Assembly (NCBI RefSeq): GCF_000315625.1
Contig: NW_005434605.1
Location: 52,407-116,406 of the forward strand
From: Guillardia theta CCMP2712
Lineage: Eukaryota; Protista; Cryptophyta
Direction: 5' to 3'
Length of the DNA stretch: 64,000 nucleotides
Position 1 is the stretch's first letter. Every line of letters starts with the position of its first letter. The notes beneath the pieces were generated by a model, which was not told the origin of the DNA, ran no database searches, and saw only the letters and a list, made by a program, of their open reading frames with translations. Shown piece by piece: positions 41,288 through 55,258 of the stretch. Position numbers and translations under genes: made by a program.

Positions 41288-44200
41288 ATGTCGTTCTTCG
41301 ACGTGTCAAAAGCTACAAATTCGTTAGAAGCATGGAGCAAATGGTTGATTGATAGAGTTCATCTTCTTATGCCTTCCGCTCCAAGTGATGAGCTTGATAA
41401 ATTTTTGAAAAGTCAGCAGACACTGTAAGTTGCGATCCTGATACTGCAAACTCGTTAATGAATCATTTTTAGATCAATTCTTGACAAATATCTTGAGAGA
41501 GATAATCAGAAATTTCTTGTCATATGCCGTAATGGAAGCAAGTACAGTATCCACAACTCCTGCCCTCAAGATGCCTTCACTTCGGTACGCCATGGTCTGC
41601 ATGAGCAAGGCTCATGACAAGGTTTCAGGGACTCTTGCTGACAAAGAGGGTGGCAAAGGAGGGGGAGAAGCAAATATTGAGTATCAGCATGACTCAGATA
41701 GATGGCAAAAGAACACTTCAAAACGCTTTGCACTTGGCTCGGGATTTGTATTATCCGCTGATCCGCCATGCTGCTGCGAGGGTATTGTACTTTGAGTGCG
41801 CTTGAGAGTTTGATCTCGGAGTCTGCAGGAAGGCTGGCCGGACGTGATTGCAAAAGAAATTCAAGAAGAGCTGCAACGATTCATGTCAGCTACCTACATC
41901 ACAATAGGTGCCAACGAAATGCTGAGGTGACTTGAATGGGGGAGATGAAATGATGGGGTTACAAGGAAACATCGCCGGAAATACCTATCTGCCTTTGCCA
42001 TACTTTGGGACTGAAGACATAGAGATCAAGGAAGAAATCAGTGGATACAACGACAAAGAAAGGTTGTGCTGAAATCATACTCTTGTGGAAAACTGATGAT
42101 GTACATTTCGTGCATAGGATCCATGTTATAGAAAACTCGATAGTTCTTTGGACAAAGCAAATCAAAGATGTCTTGCTACTCAATCCCGAGGTAAACGTGA
42201 GAAAGTCCTGATTCAAACCTTACAATCGACCGTAGACCATCTTCAAGCAAGGCTTTCCCCGTCCAGGTGACACGACCATGTTTGCTTCTCTAGACCAGTA
42301 ATGGCCTGAATGCGACAGAGGTGGAGCTAGAGTTTTGGTCCAAACAAGCCAAAAAGCTTAATTCGATCTCTCATCAGGTGCATGTCAAATAGTTCACCTC
42401 AGTACTCAGTACTAACTCGCATCTATTTGAAGTTGGAGAGCTCGAGATTTGATAAGATAATGCAAATCCTAGAAATAAGCAAAAGTACCTTCTTTCCAGG
42501 TTTTCCCTCTTGCGATATAGAAACTTGATTGACCGGTCTCTGACGGATTATTTTGAATGCAGCGTTCAGCAGACTATGCAAAGAAGTCAAAACAGCACAA
42601 GAAGAAGCAAATGACAATGTATTGTATCTTAGACCAGCCAACAAGATTTATTCAGCAATAATGGTTTTCTTCTTCATCCTTCTCTTGTCAGGATCTTACC
42701 ATTTGTTATTTGCACAGGTTGACAGTGTAACTACGATGAGACAAAGGTTCAATGTCATTATGCATGTCACATTACTTGTTTGGAAGCACTCAAAATTCTA
42801 CAACACGCAAGGTAGACTAGTCCTCCTTATAAGGGAAATTTGCAACGAGATAATCATCCGTTCGAGGAGGCAAGGAGTTGAATGTCTCATAGATACACTT
42901 GATTGACAACAATACCAGGTACATGGGGAATGAAATATGGACTTCGGAGCCTGAACATGCTATAGGGATGGTGTATGATGTTATCGAATCTTGCGAAAAC
43001 TTCAAACAGGTCTATCAAAAATTCAAAGAAAGATCAATTGCAGAGTGTCCTGACAATCCATGGAGATTTCAAAATGACGTTCTCTTCGAAAAACTTGACA
43101 ATTTTCTGGAAAGATGTAACGATGTCCTGAACCTGATGACCAACCTCAATGACTTTAAGACCTTGAAGTATTTAGAAATCGGGGGTTCAAAAGGAAAGAC
43201 TTTAACTTCAAGTGTATATCAAATTAATTCAGATTTTGAGATCTGCGTCTTGAATTTTCAAAATGCCAACATCGACATATTTGATGCAGAATCGAGATTA
43301 TTTGATGAATCGTATTTCGCATTCAAGATCAGGGTTGACGAGGTAGCCAAATTTGAGCTTGTTATTTCTGCGCTGATAGGTTTGTGCAGCTTGAGAGACG
43401 CCTTGCCTCTGTCATTGTTCAAGCATTCGAAGATTGCTCCACAATAATTGGAAAGTTGAAGTTGTTACAAAGCTTTGGAAACTTGTTGCATCGGGATGTG
43501 TTGCAAGCTGAGCTACAGTCAAAACACACGCAGCTCTTCCGGGAATATTTGCAGGTGACCCATGCTCGAGCAGTTTTGGCTTTAGTTATGATATCAGTGT
43601 TTGCAGGACATCCAGCAAGTGATAGAAATTTTCAACTCAGGCAAATCTCTCAGCCGTTTTCATTACAATTCTCCTCCTCATGCAGGTGCTGTCATGTGGT
43701 CACGTGGTCTGCTCGAAAGAATCCAAGAGCCAATGCTCAAGTTTCGACAGATATACAGCAAACAATTCAATAGGTCTGAAGGTCAAGACATCCAAAATTT
43801 GTATTCTACAACATCACATCAGTTAAGAGCTTTCGAAGACGAACATATATCACAATGGTCAGAAAATATTCTTAACATATCCGAGGAAAAATTGAAAATG
43901 CCATTGTTGAAAAGGATTTCAGGGAAGGATATGAACCTTTTGTCAGTCAACTTTGATCCCGCTTTAGTCTGTTTGCTGAGGGAAGTGAGGTACTTTGTTT
44001 CGCTAGCGATATCTGTTCCTGAAGCTGCTCGGACCTTGTTTTTGAATGAGGAAAAATTTAGAATACAGTCAGGAAATCTTGACCTGATCGTGGTGAGGTA
44101 CAACAAAATTTTACAAATGTTGAGTCAAGTTGAAAAGAGGCTGATACAAACAAGAATAGATGCTATTGACAAAATTCTTGAAAATGGGTTGACTAATATA

Positions 44201-47200
44201 AATTGGAAAAGCCATTCAATCGACGAATTCATAACTCAGGCAATGTCAATGGTTGGGGAAGCATATCATATTGCTGAGTCCATGAAACATTACATGTCAT
44301 ATACACAAGATATTCTGCAATCTTGGATCGACAATCCCATGATACAACGGAAGACGATGAAAACGTATCTGCCCACAGACTTTTCCAAATTGCAGTCTTC
44401 AGTTATTGAACAAGGTTATGCTCATATCCGGAATGGCGGTCGAACGATTCATGACTATCTTGTTAAATTTCAGAATATGGTGGGAGCCAACAAGGGGTCT
44501 GCTTCCTTCAAGGCATATCTACAAAGTGTGGATCAGATCGTCGTAGAGGGACTTCGCCGTGCATTTCTCGCCAGTTTAACATACCTTTATCACCAAATTG
44601 ATTCAGACAATCTGATAAGAAGTGATACTAATCCTCTCCTGGAGATACAACTCCTCCTTGAAAACAATCAGTTCGTATTTCAACCAACAATCTCTTCAAC
44701 AGATGACAAGAAGGGCTTAAGAGACATGATTTTCTCTTGGATACACAGTTTTCAGAATATAGGAACCCTAGTACCAAGGGTAGATAACAACGTTGGATTC
44801 GATGATTACGATGTTGAATTGCATGACGACACATTTCTCAGAAAGATTCTGAAACAAATTGATACTTCTCTGGCTGCGAGTGAAGCTGAGTGTGATGAAT
44901 TTCGTCTTTCGTTCAACGAATTCTCTTTCTTATGGATGTCTTCGCCATCAAATGCTCTAGAAAGTTTTTTAGAATATGAACGTGAAATCATTGACTCTGT
45001 TCCCTCCGTTTCAAGCTTTGAAAGAGAGATTTTCAAATATCGTCAGATTGAAGAGGAAATAAGATTTTTGCCTGGGTCTCAAGTTGTTGGTTGGTTGAAG
45101 ATCGACACAAGGCCTCTTCGGCAAACCTTGCTCAACTTAATAGCTTCATGGCGATCAGTTTTTCAGGAGTACCCGTTAAATTTTGTCGAAAAGTCTGTTT
45201 CTGAAATGCTTCAATTTATTTCTGATACATCAAAAAATCTTGACTTGGATGTCTTTGAATTCAATTCCTTGGTGAATGTTTTGAAAAGCTTGAGAGACAT
45301 CAAGCTCGTTGAAGCAAAGTTTACCATGAGGTTGAATATGATGCTTCCAATGTTGCAGATGCTTTCGAAACACGGCAGAAACATACCTTTTGAACTGATA
45401 CAAGAAGCTGAGGGTCTCAAGATGAAATGGATCGAGCTTAAGAACAAAGGCGGCTTGGTCAAAGACAAGAATTCAGATCTGATCAGGAAAGAATCTTCTT
45501 CGCTCCAAACAAAGATAAAAGAGATGACTAAGAAGGTAGAAAGGTTTAGGTCGTATTTTCTGCATCAACTTCCAAACTCCTTTCAGGATGATAGTTCTAC
45601 AGCATTTGCTCAACTTGATGCTCTGATATCCGCACCAAAGAATTCGATTCAAGTCTACCAGAAAGAAAGAGAACGACTCCTGCTGCTACAAGAGCTGTTT
45701 GAGGTTGAGATTCAGGACTTCCCTTCGCTACTCGAATGTCTAAGGGATGCACAAGTCGTGAAAACATTGTTGGATATCAATTCTTTACTTGTGAATACTT
45801 TGAAGCATTGGAAAAAACAAAGATGGTACGATGTATTACCCAAAATGATGGAAGTTGATATGATGGAGATTGACTCGATATTAGAAAATCTGAATCCCGA
45901 AGTTAAGAGGTGGAACCTCTACATTGAAATGCATAACTTGCTTGCTGAGCTGAAAATCACCATACCTATTCTGGAATCTTTACAATCCGAAAACATCAAA
46001 ACTAGGCACTGGAAGCAAATTATGAGAGCAACGGGAGTTTCATTTGTCATTGACAACAAATTCGTTTTGGAAGAACTATTAAAGTTGAACTTGCACTTGT
46101 TTAAGGATGAAATTTCTCGCATAATTGTTCAATCTTCCCAAGAGCACGGAATAGAAAAACAGCTAAGGAGGATTGAAGACTACTTTAATCAATTGAAAAT
46201 GCAAGGCTCTGACTCGAGTCAAACTTTCAACTTAAACCTGGATCCAGAAATCTACAGCGATCTTGAACAAAATCTCAATGTGCTACATACACTGGCTAGT
46301 TCCAAGTATGTATCATTCAACCAATATCTTCAAGAGGCTATTCACAGTCTTTTGGACAAACTTGGATTTGTGGAGAGGTTTTCTGAATATTGGAACACGG
46401 TGATCACGAAATGGCAATCGTTGGAGGGTGTTTATTCGAAATTCAAATTGAAAGAGGATTTTGATGAATATTATCACGTTGCAAGTGAATGGAAAAAGTA
46501 CGTCGCTGATCTACCCCAGGATTTTACATCCCTCCACTCCGCAAAAGAGATAACTTTGCAAGCATTGTGGGGTTTTGTCAACAACTTCGAAAAGTTCGAA
46601 AAGAACCTGGAAGCCTTGCTCAAGTATCGAAGAAAGATTCATCCGATTCTCTATTTCCTTTCAGACAAAGATTTGATTAAGTTGTTGACTCTCGATACCA
46701 GGATTCAAAGTCTTGACGTGTATGTCAACATGTTATCACAGGGCATTCACGGACTTTCAATTAGAAAGGAGAACAATCATAATTTCCAAGTACGTGGAAT
46801 AGTGAACAATGCAGGAGAGACACTTGCATTTCCAGAAGCAATCCTTCTATCCCAAGAAAATGATGTCAATGTATCAAACGTAATGGAGCATACGAAAAAG
46901 GTTATGGAAAATCGAATTTACAGCATGTACGTGGAATGCAAGCAAAAAGAAAGGTGGAAGACGTTTCAATCAATGTCTACACAAGAAATCCTTCATATTT
47001 TCAGCATTTTCTTTACAGAAAAGGTAACGAATGCATTGGAACAATGTGAAAAACCTGATTCCACAGGGGACATATTAGAAATATTGAGCTCAAACCTCAA
47101 GGCAGATCATCAAGAAACAGTGGATCTTAATGCACAAACATTGTCGCACATAGAACGTAAAAAGTACGCTTCTCTTGTTGTTGCAGGGCTGGCTCAACTT

Positions 47201-50200
47201 GACATAATGGGAACCTTGGTGAAATGTAGCGCATCTAGCAGAAGTTCCTTCGAGTGGCAATCTCAAAAGCGAATGTACATGAATTTCGAAACCTGCAAAA
47301 GTCACGGAGAAATTTTGAATTATAAGAGGGAGTATGGACATGAAGTTCTAGGGCATACTGAAAGAATCGTGTTGACACCGATGACTCAACGATGTCAAAT
47401 CTCAATGGCAAATGCTGCTGGTCTCCGCCAAATAGGAGCTCTACTTGGACGCTGTGGGAATGGGAAACGTTCTATCCTGCAGGACATGGCCTCGTTCTTC
47501 GGCGAAGCAATCCGCTCACAAGTCTTCTTTGAAGACTGCAAAGATATCGTCGACCTGGTACATGCACTTTCCATCACAAACAGTTGGGCCGTATTTGAGG
47601 TGTCGATGTTGAAGTCAGTCGACGCGGCTGTTCTGTACTCTGCGATCAAGGAGACCTTACTTTTCTTGAGACGAAACATTAACGTCAATAGAGGCGAAGC
47701 CGATACTATCCTACGCAGCGCTTCTTCTTCTCCCACGTTTTCTGTTCAACCTCAATTCTTTCTCACCATCGACGTAGATGCATTGAACTACCTTTGGCAT
47801 CCCTCAATCAAAGGAGATCTAAGAGCTTGCACTGTCTTTGAAGTTCACCTTGAAATTGTCCTCAGTACAAAATTGCAAAGTGAAGGCTTCCAAAAACATG
47901 TAATGCTCACCCATCGACTGTGCAGTCTCAAAGAGATAATCGAGAATCTGGTATTAACGAGAGTGAGCGTCAGCCTGTTGAAAGCTCTGATATGGAAAGC
48001 TAAAACCATTATCAGTGCAGGTTTGCTACAAGATGAGATTTCTGCATTTGTCATCGCTGTGGAAGAACTTCTGAGTCAGAGGTTCGATCTTCAGGAGCAT
48101 ACCAATGCGCAAATAATCTCACAAGTGTTTGGAGAACTGAGTCTTGAGACAAGTCCGACAGACAAAACTTGGGTGTATCGCGATTTTAGAGCAAAGACGA
48201 TCTGCTTTGAACAAGCAGCGCAAGAACACCGATCTATATTTGTCATTGGACCTGCAAATAGTGGAAAGTCTTCCATCATTCACTCATACATTGAATCTAA
48301 GGTTCAAGCAGGCAAGAAAGTGAAACATCTCTGCATGAATCCAAAAGCAATACAGACAGCTCACATGGTCGGTTATTATCGAGATGGGATTTGGATGGAT
48401 GGAGTATTGACATGCGCATTGAAGGATTTAGAGCAGGATGCCGTGCACGATATGAAGATTCTAATATTCGATTCTTTGATGGATCCAGTCTGGACTGAGA
48501 TGATAAAGCCTTTGATTGACACCAAGAGGTTCTTTCAGTCAAAGAACCAAGAGAACATAGCCATCAATCCAGACACAAAAGTCTTCTTTGAAACACCGGA
48601 CCTTCAGTTGTGCGCGCCATGCATCGTTGGAACAAGTTACATCTCTTTCGTGGGAGATGATTGTGTACCCTGGAAAGCATTGATTGAATCGTGGGTATCA
48701 GAAACTCCGCACAAAGAAATTCTCAGGGAATTTTCTGAATTCTATCTGCCCAAGATTGTGAATTTCTTGGAAGAGAACGAAGACATGATCACAGGATACC
48801 ATCTGAAGAGCAGAATCAAGGGTCTGATTGAAATATTTGACCTGATTGCACAAATCAATGTCGAAAAACTTGACAGAGAGGAGCAAACACTTGAGAAGGC
48901 AAAATCTCTGGAGGGTGTTTACATTTTTTCTTGTTTCTGGGCATTGTTTGGGTGTTTTGACTGTGAGTCGGCGACAAACTTTCGGAAGAAAGCAAACTCT
49001 TTCTGGAAAGAGACTTTTGACAGGGTGATTTTACCCAGCGACTTGACAATTTTTGAAATTTGCTTTGATTTCGTGAAGCGTGAATTTGTCCCTTGGCAGT
49101 CACAATTATCAGTTTACTTTGACATCTCGCAATCTAACTTTGGGCAGCTGTTTGTCCCAACCCCTGAAACAGTGCCATATTCTTTCCTAACTTCAATGCT
49201 TGCATCATGGAACAAGTTTGTACTGTTGAAAGGAAGGCCTGGATGCGGCAAGAGTTCTCTTATCCGCGAGACGTTAAGAGTGCTTGACCAAGAGGTGTTC
49301 TCAACTGAGTACATGCTCTTTCAATGCACTACCAGTGCAGAAACACTTCAACAGAAATTTCAGGGAATGCTGGTGAGGTCTACAAAGAGGTTCTGGTATC
49401 CCCTTAGTGGAAAGAAGCTCATCATTCAAGTAGATGACATGAATTTGTGCGAGCGAGACAGGTATGATTCGCAGAATGCCTGTGAATTTCTGCGGTACTT
49501 CTTGAAACATCGACAATACTATGAAGGATTGAGCTCTATAAGCGTCAATGTGAAGGATGTTGTAGTAGTTGGAAGCTATACACCATTCCCAGGATTTGCT
49601 TTGAGTCAAAGGCTAGAGAACAAATTCATCTCCTTCACGATTGACAACCCCAGTGACAACGCATTGCACACCATCGTTACCACTCTCGCGCTCACTCACT
49701 TCAACACTTTTGAAACCAGAATCAAATCATTCATCTCAGAAGCGATGGTGTGGGCAACCATCAACGTTCATCATATGGTGAATGAATGCTTCAAGGCTGT
49801 TGGTGAAAGGTTTCACTATGTGTATGGATTGAAGGACATTTGTGCAGTGATGCAAGGAATGTCTAGAGCTACAACGAGGTTCTTCGATTCTCCTGCTTCG
49901 TTGATCAGCTTGTGGATACATGAATGTGAAAGAGTGTACAGTGACAGATTTGTTTCCAAGTCTGACTTTCAAATTTTTAAAAAGAAGTTGAACGATGCTT
50001 GTTTCAAATGGTTTGATGAGTATGACGATGATATTAACATGATTGTCTCCAAAAACAATCTTTACGCACCTTTGGTTCTGCAGGGGCTCGAGCCAGGGTC
50101 TGAACTAGACCAAACCATGTATTCCGTAATGCTGAATATGGACAAAGCTAAGCGAGTTGTTGCGGAGAAGCACCTTGAGTTTCAAAGATCTGCCAAGTTA

Positions 50201-53200
50201 GCACCATTCGTCACTTTGACGCATTCACTTTCACACATCACCAGGCTGACAAGAGCAATGACACAACCGTCTGGCCACGTCATATTCCTTGGCTCTCATG
50301 GGAGTGAACGACGAGTTCTGATTGCTATCAGTGCTTACATCCTTGGTATCGAGCTAGTGAGCGGCAAAGGCTCTTACGATGATTTCTGGAAGGCTTGCAA
50401 ACGCTGGCATAAAGAAGCTGGTCTACATTCAAAACAAGTCGTGGTTGTACTGGAAGATGATGACCTCTTAGATTGCAAGAAAGTCTCCCTCACCCAAGAG
50501 ATCATTGCAACAGGGTACGCAAGCTCATTTTTTGATCGACAGCAGAAAGAAGATCTCTGTAAACAAGTCAAACCAAGGCTGAATGACAGCGGCATCATCG
50601 ACAACGCAGACAACTGCTGGGAATATTATCTTACAGAAGCGAGAAAGAATTTTCATTTTAGTCTGTGTTTTGCTAATGATTCTGAGTTCCGGAAAGTTTC
50701 AGTCAGTCGTTTTCCAAGCTTATATCAAGGAATAGTGATTGACTTCTATCATCCTCTCGTCAAGGAAAATCTGATAGAAATGGCCCAGATGTACCTTAAA
50801 AGTGACTTGCTTGTTCCAGAATATTTAAAGGACAATAGTGCCCAACATCTTGCCTTTGTGTTTGATTTCTTTCGGTTTTCTAGTATTTCTTCTACCATGT
50901 ATCTGGATAAATCTCCCTCTGGTTTCTTGAATTATGTTTCTGAATTTCAAGCACTGCTGAGACGTAAGCATGTTGAAAGTCAACGACGGAAGGTTAGGAT
51001 TCAGTCAGTCTTACACAAGCTTCAGACTGCAACAGAGAAAGCTAAGTTCCTGGAGCAGAGGCTCCAAGATGACTTGAGAGATCTTCAGGACAAGAGCGAC
51101 ATTGCCGAGCAGAGCTTGCAATCCTTGAGCCATGAAACTTCGATTGTGGATGCCGAGAAAGCATCAGCGTCTGAAGAGGAGGCCGTCCTTGTCTCTTGTA
51201 CCTCCGAGTTCGAACGACAACAGCAGCAGTACCTGGAAGAGCACAAGTCAGTTGATCCTTTTGTCACCGAGCTCGAAAGCTCCTTGTCCCTTATAGACAA
51301 GAAGTCTCTGAATGAACTCAAGGCACTAAACACGCCTCCTAACGGTGTAGAAGACGTCATCTTGGCTGTTGCCGTCATCGTCAACAAGGGAACTGTTCCC
51401 AAAGAGGTCGGGTGGAACTTCTGCAAGAAGGTGATAGCAAACAGCGAGCAGCTGTTGAAAGCCCTAAACTCAATCAACGGTGAGAACGTGTCAGATGCTG
51501 CTGTAGCATACTGCGAAGCCAACCTCGTCAAAAAAGACTCTTTCAACCCCGACAAGATCAGAAGCAAGAGCGCGGCAGCCTCTGGAATGTGTGCCTGGGT
51601 GATCAGTCTTTGCAGGTATCACAAGGCATTCCAGGCCGTGATGCCGGCCCGTAAGAAGCTTGATGAAGCAGCAGGCAACATGCAGAGACTGGAGGTGAGG
51701 ATGGCAAACGTTCACTCTCACCTGCAAGCCATGGACGAGAAGCTGAGCCACCTGACGAGTCTCTATCAAGCAGCGCTCGCCGAGAAGAACAAGGCACAAG
51801 GAGTGGTGAACGACACCCGGTCTCAAATCGACGTGGCAAAGAAGATGATGGACATCTTGAGTGTTCAGAGTGATCGATGGACCATGAACATCAAAAGAAT
51901 CGAGTCTGATGATCAGTTCATCTTTGGGGACACCCTGCTGTGCGCTTCATATCTTTCGTTCATGGGAGTTTGCAACCGAGTGCAAAGAAAAGAAATCTTG
52001 TCGTCTTGGAAACTGGATCTAACAGAGAGAGACATCGCTGTGTCAAAGGAGTTCAGCATCACGAGAAACCTGCTGAGTGAGGTCGAGATTGATAGATGTC
52101 ACCTTTGGAAGCTCCCTCAAGATTCTCTTGTACTCGAAAATGCTGCGCTGGTGCTGCACAGCCTTCAGACGCCGGTGATCCTTGATCCTGATGATGTTTT
52201 CTTGAGATGGCTGCGCAATCACTTGGGTCTGCAAGAACAAGGAGTGGCTCATGGTCAAACTTCCGAGGTGGTATGGTGCAGCTGTCATGACAAAAATTTC
52301 GTCGAGAAAATCGATGCTTGCATCACATCGGCGAAGATGTTGGTAGCCTTTGACTTGCTGGATGACATTCCAGACAGCCTGCTTGGGTATCTCAGTAAAA
52401 AGAACAACATTTACTTGCATACACGATTGGAAAGGCCGAGGTTCATCAGCGAGCACTGCTCCGTACTCACAGTCATAGACTGCAAGCTAGATTCAACATC
52501 CTTTGAGGCAATCTTGCAGGAAGTGATCAACCGAGAGCTCGACTTTGACAACTACAAGAAGGTTTTGAGTCAAAAGGAGGAACAGATCGAGTTGCTCGGG
52601 AAAAGAGAATCCTGTGAGCAAGAGCTTCTCAGCCTCATAGCGGACTCCAGTGGAGACGTTCTTGAAGACCCAGGTTTCTTGGAGAATTTGGAGAAATTCT
52701 GGACAAGATTTCAGGCAGCTGGTGAGGAGTACGAAAGAAGTACACTTCATCAGGAAGAAATTCGATTGCCTGCGGAGTATTATGAGGTTTCCTATCGCGG
52801 AACGCTGCTTTACCAGCTAGCTCAGAGGCTGGTACACTTGGACAGCACTTACATGGTCTCCACTCCTCAACTGTTGACTTCGTTTCTGCGAGGTCTGAGG
52901 AGTGCTTCGGATGATGAGGCACATCAGAACAAGGCGGACCCTGACTGGAAGCTGCAGAGCTTGATGCTAGCAACCACGTTGCACATGTGCAGGTTGGTGG
53001 TTGCTAGCCTGTCGAGCACTCATCGGTTGCCTTTCTTGTCGTTTGTCACGCTGGAGGTGTCGGCGGCCAAGGACCCATGGGCCTCGCAATGCAAGGGCTT
53101 TCTCTTGAGGAAGCAGCGAGCGCAGGCGACCGAGTCGTCACCCTTCCCTTGGCTGCACGAGTCCCAGTGGTCGCAGCTCTCCGACCTCGAGGACTTGGCC

Positions 53201-55258
53201 CTGCCCCCGCAATCCGGTTCCTCTACTTTGGTGTTGAGGCCCTTTGCAGGGTTCAAGCAGGAGATGCTAAGGTCCTCGGGCCGCTTCCGAGAGTGGTACC
53301 TCTCTGACAGCCCTGAGCACGCCTCGCTGCCCGGAGACTGGCGGCAAATAGACGAAACATCCATGATCGCCCTCGTCTCCATCCTGCGACCTGACCGCCT
53401 GCCACAAGCGTTGGAGCAGCTCGTGAGAAAGACACTCGGCCTGGGGTCCCTGTCCACGATCCTCAACTCCGATGAAGCTGTCAAGGAACAGGGCGACAGC
53501 AAGCATCCTATCTTCTTCATCGTCAACGAGGACGAAGACGTGGAGGAGCTGGTCAGGGCAACTTTGCAGTATGCTGGCCTGATGCCATCGGGTCGGAAGA
53601 TGAGATCGATCATCCTGTCGGACACTGACATGGATAGACTAGACATATTACTAGAGGAAGAGCTTGAGGGGGACCATGTTGTTCACCTCCAAGATGTGCA
53701 AGTTGCAAGCAGATGGTTGAATCTGAGCTTTCCGCTCTTTCTCTCGAGGCTGAGACAAGGAACATTGCCTTGTATTTTGATTCTATCCGGAAAACGAGCC
53801 GCGATCACTGAGGTGATTAGTGGAACCTGCTTGAAGGTTGACAGGACAGCACCAAGGTCACTGCACTCATGCTTGAAGATGAACGTGCAGGCTGTCGGAG
53901 ACAAGATCGATCTGGAGCACTCTTCTCCTACCTCCAGGAAGATGATGTTTGCCCTCTGCGTCTTCTACGCGGTCATCGACTTCCGCAAAAGCTTCCGGGA
54001 GGTCGGATGGAACCATCGGTACTCCTTCGGTCTCGACTCCTTGCTTGTCGCTTGCGAGTTCGCCTCCGACGTCGCTGAAGGCTTCGCCATCAGCCCCTGG
54101 CAGCACCTCAGGCACATGGTTGTGCGGCTCACCTGTGGCGAGGAGATGTCAGATGGTATAGATGAATCTGTGCTAGACGCCTATTGCCACAAGTTTGTTT
54201 CCGAGAGTCTCCTGTCCAACTTGGAAATCCTTCCTGGTTTGAAAACTCCTGGAGCTAGGTACGAATGGAACGACATTGTGGGTCAACTTCAGCAGGAGGA
54301 AGTCCTCCATTCCCCCACGAGCATCGGGTTGTTCAAGTACGCGGGGCTACGGCAATCCCTGGAGGAGTCTCAAATCCTGCTGGAATGCATCGGATCTTTG
54401 CAGCTCGAGGCCTCCGGGAGCAGCAGGAGCAGCGAGGAGGCGCTCACCATAGCAGACGAGATCCTCGACAAGATCCCGGAGGTGATCAGCGTCGAGAGCG
54501 CAAGGAAAGACCCGCTCTCCTTCTTCTTTCTCAGCGAGATCGATCGGCTGAACCGGTTGACCTCCAAGATGACGGTTGACGTCACCAAGTGGCGGAAGGG
54601 GCTGAAGCAGCAGCTGCTGTCAGCTGACGAGAGCGGCTCGGTGGGCAGCATGGCAAGTAACATGGTGCCGACGGCATGGGAGGCGATGGCCTACCCCTCG
54701 CTGAGGTCTCTGTCGTCATGGCTGGCAGACTTGAAGGAGCGACACGGTCAGCTGCGAGACATCGCGAGCTCCGACCTCGAGCCGCTGAAGGCGATCTGGT
54801 TGCCCGGCCTCTTCTGCCCTCAGGCCTTTATGCATGCCGTGCGAGTGTCGCTCGCCAAGACGACGAGCATGGCGGTCGAGGCGACTGAGATCGAGGCAGC
54901 CGTCTTGTCCGGGGAGAGAGCAGCCCCAGGAGCCTTCGATGGTGAAGCGTTTCATGTGAGTGGCATCTTCTTGGAGGGTGCGCGATGGAGCGAGCAAGAC
55001 GCGAGGCTCGAGCTCGCGTCCGAGCATCACACCAGCTGCAGCAGAATCGCTGACGTCAGTCTGACTCCTCGCAAGGAGAGAAGCAAACCGAGCCTCTCCC
55101 TCCCCGTCTACCGCACTCGCATGCGCGGGAACTCCTACCTCTTCCACTTGCTCTTCCCTTCCAACGAGCACAGTGCTGCATGGCTCATGAGCGGGGCTGC
55201 CGTTGTACTCGACGTTGAAACTTCAGCTCGAAGTGAGGGAGGTCCTAGTGTGAGGTAG
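41288..55258 (+). CDS. Divergent axonemal dynein heavy chain (two-headed/outer-arm type tail); many small 5' exons then one exon of about 11.6 kb
   Basis: Tail motifs IHVIENSIVLWTKQIKDVL, SKFYNTQGRLVLLIREICNEII, PPHAGAVMWSRGLLERI; linker IKTRHWKQIM, LYFLSDKDLIKLL; RIVLTPMTQRC; P-loops GPANSGKS and GRPGCGKS; MTBD ELKALNTPPNGV; C-terminus IWLPGLFCPQAF, VSGIFLEGARW, LPVYRT. Start codon approximate. Confidence 0.92.

What the first reader, a model, noticed from the sequence alone, without database searches (positions are those of the whole stretch)
47447..47605. Full-length dynein heavy chain with a degenerate AAA1 catalytic site (probable motor-dead dynein)
Seen: AAA1 Walker A is GRCGNGKRS (canonical GPAGTGKTE) and Walker B is WAVFEVSML (canonical WGCFDEFNR). 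The AAA4 P-loop is GSHGSERR (about 50290-50313). AAA2 (GPANSGKS), AAA3 (GRPGCGKS, IQVDDMN), the stalk/MTBD and the N-terminal tail remain recognisable, and a 3885-codon frame is uninterrupted, so the gene appears to be under selection. Established: AAA1 is the main hydrolysis site driving the power stroke. Inference: a structural, tether or brake dynein in the flagellar apparatus, analogous to but possibly independent of animal DNHD1.
Basis: partly seen in the sequence, partly recalled or inferred. Interest (0 to 1): 0.72.

Follow-up and report, generated by a model that had tools for sequence, protein, structure and literature searches.

The report
Motor-dead outer-arm dynein heavy chain
The cryptophyte alga Guillardia theta expresses a full-length flagellar outer-arm-type dynein whose main ATP-burning site is destroyed, while its anchoring tail and microtubule-binding stalk are kept. 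It is therefore probably a non-motile structural or regulatory arm component, one of seven such genes in this genome, and of a kind so far studied only in animals.

Summary
The frame 43601-55258 (+) is the last exon of a spliced, expressed dynein heavy chain gene of Guillardia theta (annotated GUITHDRAFT_75827).

**AAA1 site.** It has lost:
- the Walker A threonine
- one Walker B acid
- the sensor-I loop
- the sensor-II arginine
- the arginine finger from AAA2

The AAA4 P-loop lysine is also gone. The AAA2 and AAA3 P-loops, the linker, the stalk/MTBD and the tail are kept.

**Conservation.** Hanusia phi has an intact orthologue (67% identical) with the same dead site. Between the two species the tail is the best conserved part (83-87%), then AAA3 (79%), and AAA1 is among the worst (56%). 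This is the reverse of normal dyneins.

**Class and relatives.** The tail is outer-arm beta type. The genome holds six more AAA1-dead heavy chains: two beta-tailed (one only weakly), three gamma-tailed, one unclassed. The scan had already flagged these paralogues on other DNA.

**Literature.** Kollmar (2016) listed Guillardia "orphan" dyneins without analysing their ATP sites. Non-motile dyneins (DNHD1, DNAHX) have been described only in animals.

**Verdict.** This is a real, selected pseudo-motor and a new variant of a known kind. Its role as tether, brake or regulator is inferred, not shown.

The parts
41700..43606 (+). 5' exons and eleven short introns (45-63 nt) of the gene. Introns lie at about 41781-41827, 41906-41963, 42061-42115, 42189-42233, 42264-42315, 42376-42430, 42497-42559, 42663-42716, 42868-42916, 43341-43387 and 43548-43599 (the last may be shifted by up to 7 nt). 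The mRNA continues for a further 528 spliced nt upstream of 41700.
   Evidence: joints in the contigs of runs X1 and X2, ten of eleven readable as GT..AG; the exons encode the N-terminal part of DHC_N1.
43607..55258 (+). Last exon, about 3883 codons plus the stop. It encodes the rest of the tail, the linker, AAA1-AAA6, the stalk/MTBD and the C-terminal domain.
43604..46921 (+). Tail (C-terminal part of DHC_N1) and linker (DHC_N2), outer-arm beta type.
   Evidence: Pfam; outer-arm beta chains score 216-443 bits, the next class 191; tail tree.
47333..48271 (+). AAA1 module, the most degenerate part of the protein (Pfam AAA_6 scores only 57 bits, against 410-520 for the canonical paralogues).
47447..47473 (+). 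AAA1 Walker A remnant. The glycines and the lysine are kept. The Mg-binding Thr is replaced by Arg (Gln in Hanusia).
47585..47611 (+). AAA1 Walker B remnant. Only one acidic residue is left of the Asp-Glu pair, and a deletion follows it.
48248..48271 (+). AAA2 P-loop, canonical.
49130..49651 (+). AAA3 large domain with a canonical P-loop (49232-49255) and an axonemal-type Asp-Asp Walker B. It is the best conserved AAA module between Guillardia and Hanusia.
50291..50314 (+). AAA4 P-loop remnant. The lysine is replaced by glutamate in both species.
50996..52003 (+). Stalk coiled coil and microtubule-binding domain. Its length is unchanged (336 versus 337 residues) and most canonical invariant residues are kept.
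54365..55207 (+). C-terminal domain (Dynein_C). It ends 16 residues before the stop, so there is no extension.

Best explanation
This is a functional, expressed gene for a heavy chain derived from the outer-arm beta dynein family that can no longer hydrolyse ATP at AAA1, the site that drives the power stroke.

**What the protein keeps.** It keeps the beta-type tail, which in canonical arms binds the partner heavy chain, the intermediate and light chains, and the A-tubule docking site. It also keeps the linker, the P-loops of AAA2 and AAA3, and a stalk/MTBD of normal length.

**Most likely role.** It is probably built into an outer-arm-like complex of the flagellar axoneme as a non-motile head. 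Its partner may be one of the gamma-tailed heavy chains. In that position it would bind the neighbouring B-tubule as a passive or AAA3-modulated cross-bridge (tether, brake or regulator) and would not generate force.

**Shown:**
- loss of the catalytic site
- expression
- conservation of the lesion in Hanusia
- the tail class
- the pattern of constraint

**Inferred:**
- axonemal location
- the partner
- microtubule binding
- the mechanical role
For: **Catalytic site.** Measured against nine canonical chains, the site has lost the Walker A Thr, one Walker B acid, the sensor-I loop, the sensor-II Arg (now Lys, with a lid deletion) and the AAA2 Arg finger. The same changes are present in Hanusia.

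**Expression.** Spliced contigs from two independent studies carry eleven removed introns, and raw RNA reads also map.

**Selection.**
- The frame is open for 3885 codons.
- Hanusia has an intact 3701-residue orthologue, 67% identical.
- Identity between the two species is 83-87% in the tail, 79% in AAA3, 70% in the stalk/MTBD and 56% in AAA1.
- Canonical invariant columns are kept at 91% in the tail, 58-65% in the stalk/MTBD, 55% in AAA3 and 29% in AAA1.

**Class.** PDB scores, the tail tree and the LG+G4 motor tree all point to outer-arm beta.

**Context.** The genome has six further AAA1-dead heavy chains, with beta or gamma tails where classed.
Against: - No localisation, proteomic or biochemical data exist for this protein.
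- The P-loop glycines and lysine survive in both species, so AAA1 may still bind ATP. A hydrolysis-dead, ATP-locked dynein is expected to bind microtubules weakly, as reported for DNAHX. That would argue against a rigor-like tether.
- Placement of the motor domain is model-dependent.
- dN/dS could not be computed, because no Hanusia nucleotide sequence was available.
Confidence: 0.6

Rival explanations
1. It is an assembly or transport template, not an axonemal component. As proposed for DNAHX, the dead head would be locked in one conformation. It would pair with an active heavy chain in an autoinhibited phi particle during cytoplasmic pre-assembly or intraflagellar transport, and would then be recycled.
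For: - The Walker A lysine is kept while the catalytic residues are lost. That suits an ATP-locked state like the one reported for DNAHX.
- The tail, which mediates dimerisation, is the most conserved part of the protein.
Against: - DNAHX lost its microtubule-binding domain. Here the stalk/MTBD is unchanged in length and well conserved, which suggests that microtubule binding matters.
- There is no insertion in the AAA4 small domain and the protein is not longer than usual.
Confidence: 0.15
2. It is still an active motor. The drive would come from hydrolysis at AAA3, or from a non-canonical catalytic arrangement at AAA1.
For: - AAA3 keeps its Walker A and Walker B and is the best conserved AAA module.
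- The linker and stalk are intact.
Against: - From established knowledge of cytoplasmic dynein mutants, AAA1 Walker mutants abolish motility and AAA3 alone does not drive it.
- Five separate elements of the AAA1 site are gone, including the trans-acting Arg finger.
- AAA1 is among the least constrained parts between the two species.
Confidence: 0.08
3. It has a non-flagellar role. The protein could be a microtubule-associated tether on cytoplasmic arrays of the cryptophyte cell, such as flagellar roots or the rhizostyle, having been freed from axonemal duty.
For: - The gene evolves fast and is restricted to one lineage. Only Hanusia has an orthologue among 1.8 billion representative proteins.
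- The genome has many extra heavy chains.
Against: - The tail keeps 91% of the columns that are invariant in canonical outer-arm beta chains. This points to the usual partners and docking.
- Kollmar (PMC5100056) argues from tails that all such orphans are axonemal.
Confidence: 0.1
4. It is a decaying, functionless paralogue that happens still to be transcribed.
For: - Divergence from every canonical dynein is extreme (22-27% identity).
- The nucleotide sites AAA1 and AAA4 are both degenerate.
Against: - There is no stop in 3885 codons (ln P about -225).
- Eleven introns are correctly spliced.
- The Hanusia orthologue is also intact despite 33% amino-acid divergence.
- Constraint is strongly uneven along the protein.
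Confidence: 0.04

Closest known systems
DNAHX / dynein-X of sea urchin sperm (Chai et al. 2025, bioRxiv 10.1101/2025.01.18.633724); probably Kollmar's class 12
   Same: - A full-length heavy chain derived from an outer-arm paralogue.
- Non-conserved AAA1 motifs: the Walker A Thr is lost, the sensor-I loop is altered and the sensor-II Arg is replaced by Lys.
- Proposed to be non-motile and to pair with another heavy chain.
   Different: - DNAHX derives from the other outer-arm lineage (alpha in animal naming, gamma in Chlamydomonas), whereas this gene has a beta tail.
- DNAHX is about 5270 residues long, with insertions that disrupt the MTBD and lock AAA4, and it keeps Walker B. The window gene has no such insertions, has an intact stalk/MTBD, and has lost Walker B.
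- DNAHX was reported as animal-only and absent from protists.
DNHD1 (Kollmar class 11), the animal 'orphan' heavy chain needed for sperm flagella
   Same: - AAA1 is poorly conserved and lacks catalytic Walker B residues.
- It is regarded as a non-motile dynein with a real function.
   Different: - DNHD1 is restricted to metazoans and is highly aberrant, with disordered insertions throughout.
- The window gene has a clear outer-arm beta tail and an ordinary domain layout.
- No DNHD1 sequence was available here, so the two were not compared directly.
Kollmar 2016 class-13 dyneins and the Guillardia/Thecamonas 'orphans' (PMC5100056)
   Same: - An outer-arm-beta-like (class-4) tail joined to a strongly divergent motor.
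- Predicted to form a heterodimer with a partner carrying the other outer-arm tail type.
- Guillardia orphans were reported to group basal to classes 12 and 13.
- In my trees the gene groups with a beetle AAA1-dead chain.
   Different: - Class 13 is defined by a longer AAA5 and a low-complexity C-terminal extension. Here AAA5 is shorter than canonical and there is no extension.
- No indels are shared with the animal or ichthyosporean dead chains.
- That paper did not analyse ATP sites.
Canonical outer-arm beta heavy chain (Chlamydomonas beta, DNAH9/11/17)
   Same: - Best match over the whole length and in the tail.
- Same domain order and same stalk length.
   Different: - Only about 26% identity, where canonical orthologues share 50-90%.
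- The AAA1 and AAA4 sites are dead.
- Guillardia has a separate canonical beta gene, on contig 76 (locus L025).

Membership tests
Dynein heavy chain superfamily | Tail (DHC_N1), linker (DHC_N2), six AAA modules, stalk/MTBD between AAA4 and AAA5, and a C-terminal domain, in that order | tested here: met
   all Pfam modules are over their cut-offs and in canonical order.
Outer-arm beta heavy chain (class 4; DNAH9/11/17) | Beta-type N-terminal tail | tested here: met
   beta chains score 216-443 bits, the next class 191; the gene falls inside the beta tail clade (support 99).
Outer-arm beta heavy chain (class 4; DNAH9/11/17) | Motor domain groups within the beta clade | tested here: inconclusive
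   - LG+G4, 1207 columns: inside the beta family (support 100).
- FastTree: in a long-branch cluster outside it.
- Site-heterogeneous model, 610 columns: unresolved.
Outer-arm beta heavy chain (class 4; DNAH9/11/17) | Catalytic AAA1 (Walker A Thr, Walker B Asp-Glu, sensor I, sensor II Arg, Arg finger) | tested here: not met
   all five elements are lost or altered.
DNAHX / class 12 | Tail of the other outer-arm lineage (DNAH5/8 type) | tested here: not met
   DNAH5-type chains score far below the beta chains.
DNAHX / class 12 | Aberrant stalk without a normal MTBD; insertion in the AAA4 small domain; length over 5000 residues | tested here: not met
   the stalk is 336 residues against 337, the MTBD invariant residues are mostly kept, there are no large insertions, and the gene is about 4400 codons.
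DNAHX / class 12 | Non-conserved AAA1 motifs | tested here: met
   compared with the description read.
Kollmar class 13 | Class-4-like tail with a divergent motor | tested here: met
Kollmar class 13 | Longer AAA5 and a low-complexity C-terminal extension | tested here: not met
   AAA5 is 365 residues against 414 in the reference. Dynein_C ends 16 residues before the stop.
DNHD1 / class 11 | Sequence grouping with animal DNHD1 | not tested
   No DNHD1 sequence was returned by any search. Independence is inferred from the beta tail and from PMC5100056.

The most novel reading that the evidence does not exclude
The seven AAA1-dead heavy chains of Guillardia may form dedicated two-headed, non-motile outer-arm-like complexes. 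Two of them (this gene and C69:420k) have clear beta tails, a third is weakly beta, three have gamma tails and one is unclassed. These complexes would be homologous to the animal class-12/13 pair (dynein-X). If so, 'dead' outer arms would be an ancient part of the eukaryotic flagellum, dating to near the last eukaryotic common ancestor, and not an animal invention.
Probability: 0.2. Interest if true: 0.75.

Novelty: new variant of a known kind. Interest (0 to 1): 0.55.

Why it matters
Non-motile dynein heavy chains have only recently been recognised, and only in animals. DNHD1 is needed for human sperm flagella. DNAHX was described in 2025 and explicitly reported as absent from protists.

This gene shows that a protist keeps, expresses and selects for an outer-arm-derived heavy chain with an erased motor site. 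Unlike DNAHX, it has an intact microtubule-binding stalk.

Taken with its six paralogues, which carry both outer-arm tail types, it raises a testable question. Either dead outer-arm pairs are ancient, or pseudo-motors arise repeatedly.

It also offers a natural experiment on what a dynein ring does when only AAA2 and AAA3 can bind nucleotide.

Tried and rejected
**Foreign origin or odd composition: rejected.** The gene's low GC is not special. GC3 ranges from 41 to 85% among both canonical and dead dynein genes of this genome.

**Recent cryptophyte-specific duplication of the beta gene.**
- An AU test rejects the gene as sister to the cryptophyte-like canonical beta chain (p = 1e-5).
- Long-branch effects could produce the same result, so I do not treat this as settled.

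**Single origin of all the dead chains.** This is rejected only weakly (p = 0.02).

**Common ancestry with animal or ichthyosporean dead chains.** I looked for shared indels in AAA1 as rare-change evidence and found none.

**More orthologues.**
- A full HMMER scan of 1.8 billion representatives found only Hanusia above 28% identity.
- The next hits are ordinary beta-family chains.

**Rate calibration against the canonical beta gene.**
- One search timed out and was not counted.
- The repeat returned other cryptophyte-like beta chains, 82-90% identical to Guillardia's, but no Hanusia sequence.
- No direct rate ratio can therefore be given, and no dN/dS.

**Technical failures.**
- Two tree runs with the site-heterogeneous model gave no answer.
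I redid that step with coordinates and generic P-loop patterns.
- Kollmar's supplementary tables are not held, so I could not confirm which named orphan this gene is.

Exons and the database model P0001 were used by reference only.

Full report
**What is there.**
- The window comes from the nuclear genome of the cryptophyte Guillardia theta. Earlier scan notes said so. The protein search confirmed it by returning the annotated model GUITHDRAFT_75827 (partial, 4312 residues) at 100% identity.
- The open frame 43601-55258 on the + strand has 3885 codons.
- It carries every dynein heavy chain module in canonical order: the end of DHC_N1, DHC_N2, AAA1 to AAA6, the stalk and Dynein_C.
- DHC_N1 begins only at profile position 353, so the gene must start upstream.
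- Reads laid on 41700-47699 show this directly. A 15.9-kb contig from one study and contigs from a second study skip eleven introns of 45-63 nt between 41781 and about 43606. Ten of the eleven can be read as GT..AG.
- Those contigs are otherwise identical to the window, including the AAA1 site. A 2026 RNA-seq run adds a few raw reads.
- The gene is therefore transcribed and spliced, and the odd motifs are not assembly errors.
- The last exon starts at about 43607, and the mRNA extends a further 528 spliced nt upstream of 41700. All work used the window, loci and database proteins by reference.

**The observation.**
- HMMER alignments to solved dyneins and multiple alignments with nine canonical chains place them under the canonical motifs.
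  - The Mg-binding threonine of Walker A is replaced.
  - Only one of the two Walker B acids remains, followed by a deletion.
  - The sensor-I loop is unrecognisable and longer.
  - The sensor-II arginine is a lysine, next to a lid deletion of some 16-22 residues.
  - The arginine finger that AAA2 contributes to the AAA1 pocket is gone.
- AAA4 has lost its P-loop lysine.
- AAA2 and AAA3 keep canonical P-loops, and AAA3 keeps the axonemal Asp-Asp Walker B.

**Is it selected?**
- An open frame of this length has ln P of about -225 by chance.
- Hanusia phi, the sister genus, has a transcript-derived orthologue of 3701 residues that is 67% identical.
- The orthologue carries the same kind of lesion at every AAA1 element and at AAA4. 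Within Walker A only the glycines and the lysine are shared.
- Identity between the two species by domain:

| Domain | Guillardia-Hanusia identity |
|---|---|
| Tail | 83-87% |
| AAA3 | 79% |
| Stalk/MTBD and linker | about 70% |
| AAA2 and AAA4 | 68% |
| AAA5, AAA6 and C-terminus | 58-60% |
| AAA1 | 56% |
| Segment just before AAA1 | 52% |

- Among canonical chains from different supergroups the order is reversed: AAA1 about 60% and the tail 22-31%.
- Of the columns that are nearly invariant in canonical chains, the gene keeps 91% in the tail, 58-65% in the stalk/MTBD, 55% in AAA3 and 29% in AAA1.
- The stalk has no length change.
- Constraint has therefore moved away from the catalytic site and onto the tail, AAA3 and the microtubule-binding apparatus.

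**What kind of dynein.**
- Over its whole length, and in the tail alone, the best matches among solved structures are outer-arm beta chains.
- A tail tree puts the gene inside the beta clade.
- The motor is so divergent (22-27% identity to anything but Hanusia) that its placement depends on the method:
  - FastTree lumps all divergent chains together.
  - IQ-TREE under LG+G4 places it in the beta family with full support.
  - A site-heterogeneous model on fewer columns leaves it unresolved.
- A full scan of 1.8 billion representative proteins found no relative above 28% identity except Hanusia. The next hits are ordinary beta-family members.
- Guillardia has a separate canonical beta gene (locus L025).

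**Family context.** A Pfam AAA1 scan of the whole genome gave about two dozen heavy chain loci with canonical sites and seven with degenerate ones. Tail classes come from matches to solved structures:

| Locus | Tail class |
|---|---|
| Window gene | beta |
| Contig 69, near 420 kb | beta |
| Contig 21 | beta, weakly |
| Contig 93 | gamma (DNAH5 type) |
| Contig 1 | gamma (DNAH5 type) |
| Contig 11, near 130 kb | gamma (DNAH5 type) |
| Contig 11, near 65 kb | not classed |

- The LG+G4 tree places the gamma-tailed set as sister to canonical gamma chains and the beta-tailed set with the beta family.
- One clade holding all the dead chains is rejected weakly (p = 0.02). AAA1 was therefore probably inactivated at least twice.
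- The scan had already flagged the six paralogues on other DNA, with similar readings. I found them independently before reading those notes.

**Literature.**
- Kollmar 2016 (PMC5100056) catalogued Guillardia "orphan" dyneins. That paper noted that they group basal to the animal classes 12 and 13, whose tails resemble the two outer-arm classes, and predicted heterodimers. It stated that ATP sites were not analysed.
- Chai et al. 2025 described DNAHX, a non-motile heavy chain derived from the other outer-arm lineage. It has a disrupted MTBD and an ATP-locked AAA1, is said to be absent from protists, and was compared with DNHD1.
- I found no paper describing AAA1-dead dyneins in protists.

**How it most likely works.**
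- Shown: the gene cannot run the canonical AAA1 ATPase cycle.
- Inferred: with a beta tail it joins an outer-arm-like complex, and with an intact stalk it binds the adjacent doublet. It would then act as a non-motile cross-bridge or regulator. AAA3, the best kept nucleotide site, may tune it.
- Open: the P-loop lysine survives, so an ATP-locked, weakly binding state as in DNAHX is possible. The conserved MTBD argues against that, but does not exclude it.

**Limits.**
- There are no localisation or biochemical data.
- No dN/dS could be computed.
- There was no direct comparison with DNHD1, DNAHX or named class-13 sequences.
- The recurrent grouping with a beetle dead chain has no support from shared indels and may be long-branch attraction.

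Noticed in passing
window 43601-55258: Third-position GC rises steadily along the exon, from about 41% at the 5' end to 74% at the 3' end. The gene lies in a 39-42% GC stretch of a window that is otherwise about 53% GC.
   Followed up: partly
window 41781-43606: All eleven mapped introns are tiny (45-63 nt) and lie in the first 2 kb or so, ahead of an intron-free exon of 11.6 kb. Several other Guillardia dynein genes have open frames of 4100-4500 codons. This suggests a 3'-biased loss of introns.
   Followed up: no
window 42188-42920: The annotated model GUITHDRAFT_75827 is partial at its 5' end. It also disagrees with the RNA-supported splice sites in this stretch, where its residues 89-230 match the translated DNA at only about 70%.
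   Followed up: partly
G000 contigs C69:420602, C11:130715, C11:65207, C21:288937, C1:346981, C93:135890 (loci L027, L030-L044): Six further full-length heavy chain genes have degenerate AAA1 sites. Five of the seven dead chains keep the P-loop lysine, and all seven lack the Walker B glutamate. Where classed, their tails are beta or gamma type.
   Followed up: partly
proteins P0141 (Chromosphaera perkinsii), P0240 (Gonioctena beetle), P0148, P0232, P0185, P0226, P0238: Heavy chains with degenerate AAA1 motifs turn up in several unrelated eukaryotes among the representative hits. P0141 has a beta-like tail and a long AAA5, as described for Kollmar's class 13.
   Followed up: partly
G000 loci L005/L020, L006/L018, L008/L009, L010/L013, L001/L002: The canonical dynein genes of Guillardia come in closely related pairs. 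This fits the unusual duplications noted by Kollmar for this species.
   Followed up: no
window 55259 to about 57670: The 15.9-kb RNA contig of run X1 would extend about 2.4 kb past the stop codon if it stays colinear. That means either a long 3' UTR or read-through into the next transcript.
   Followed up: no
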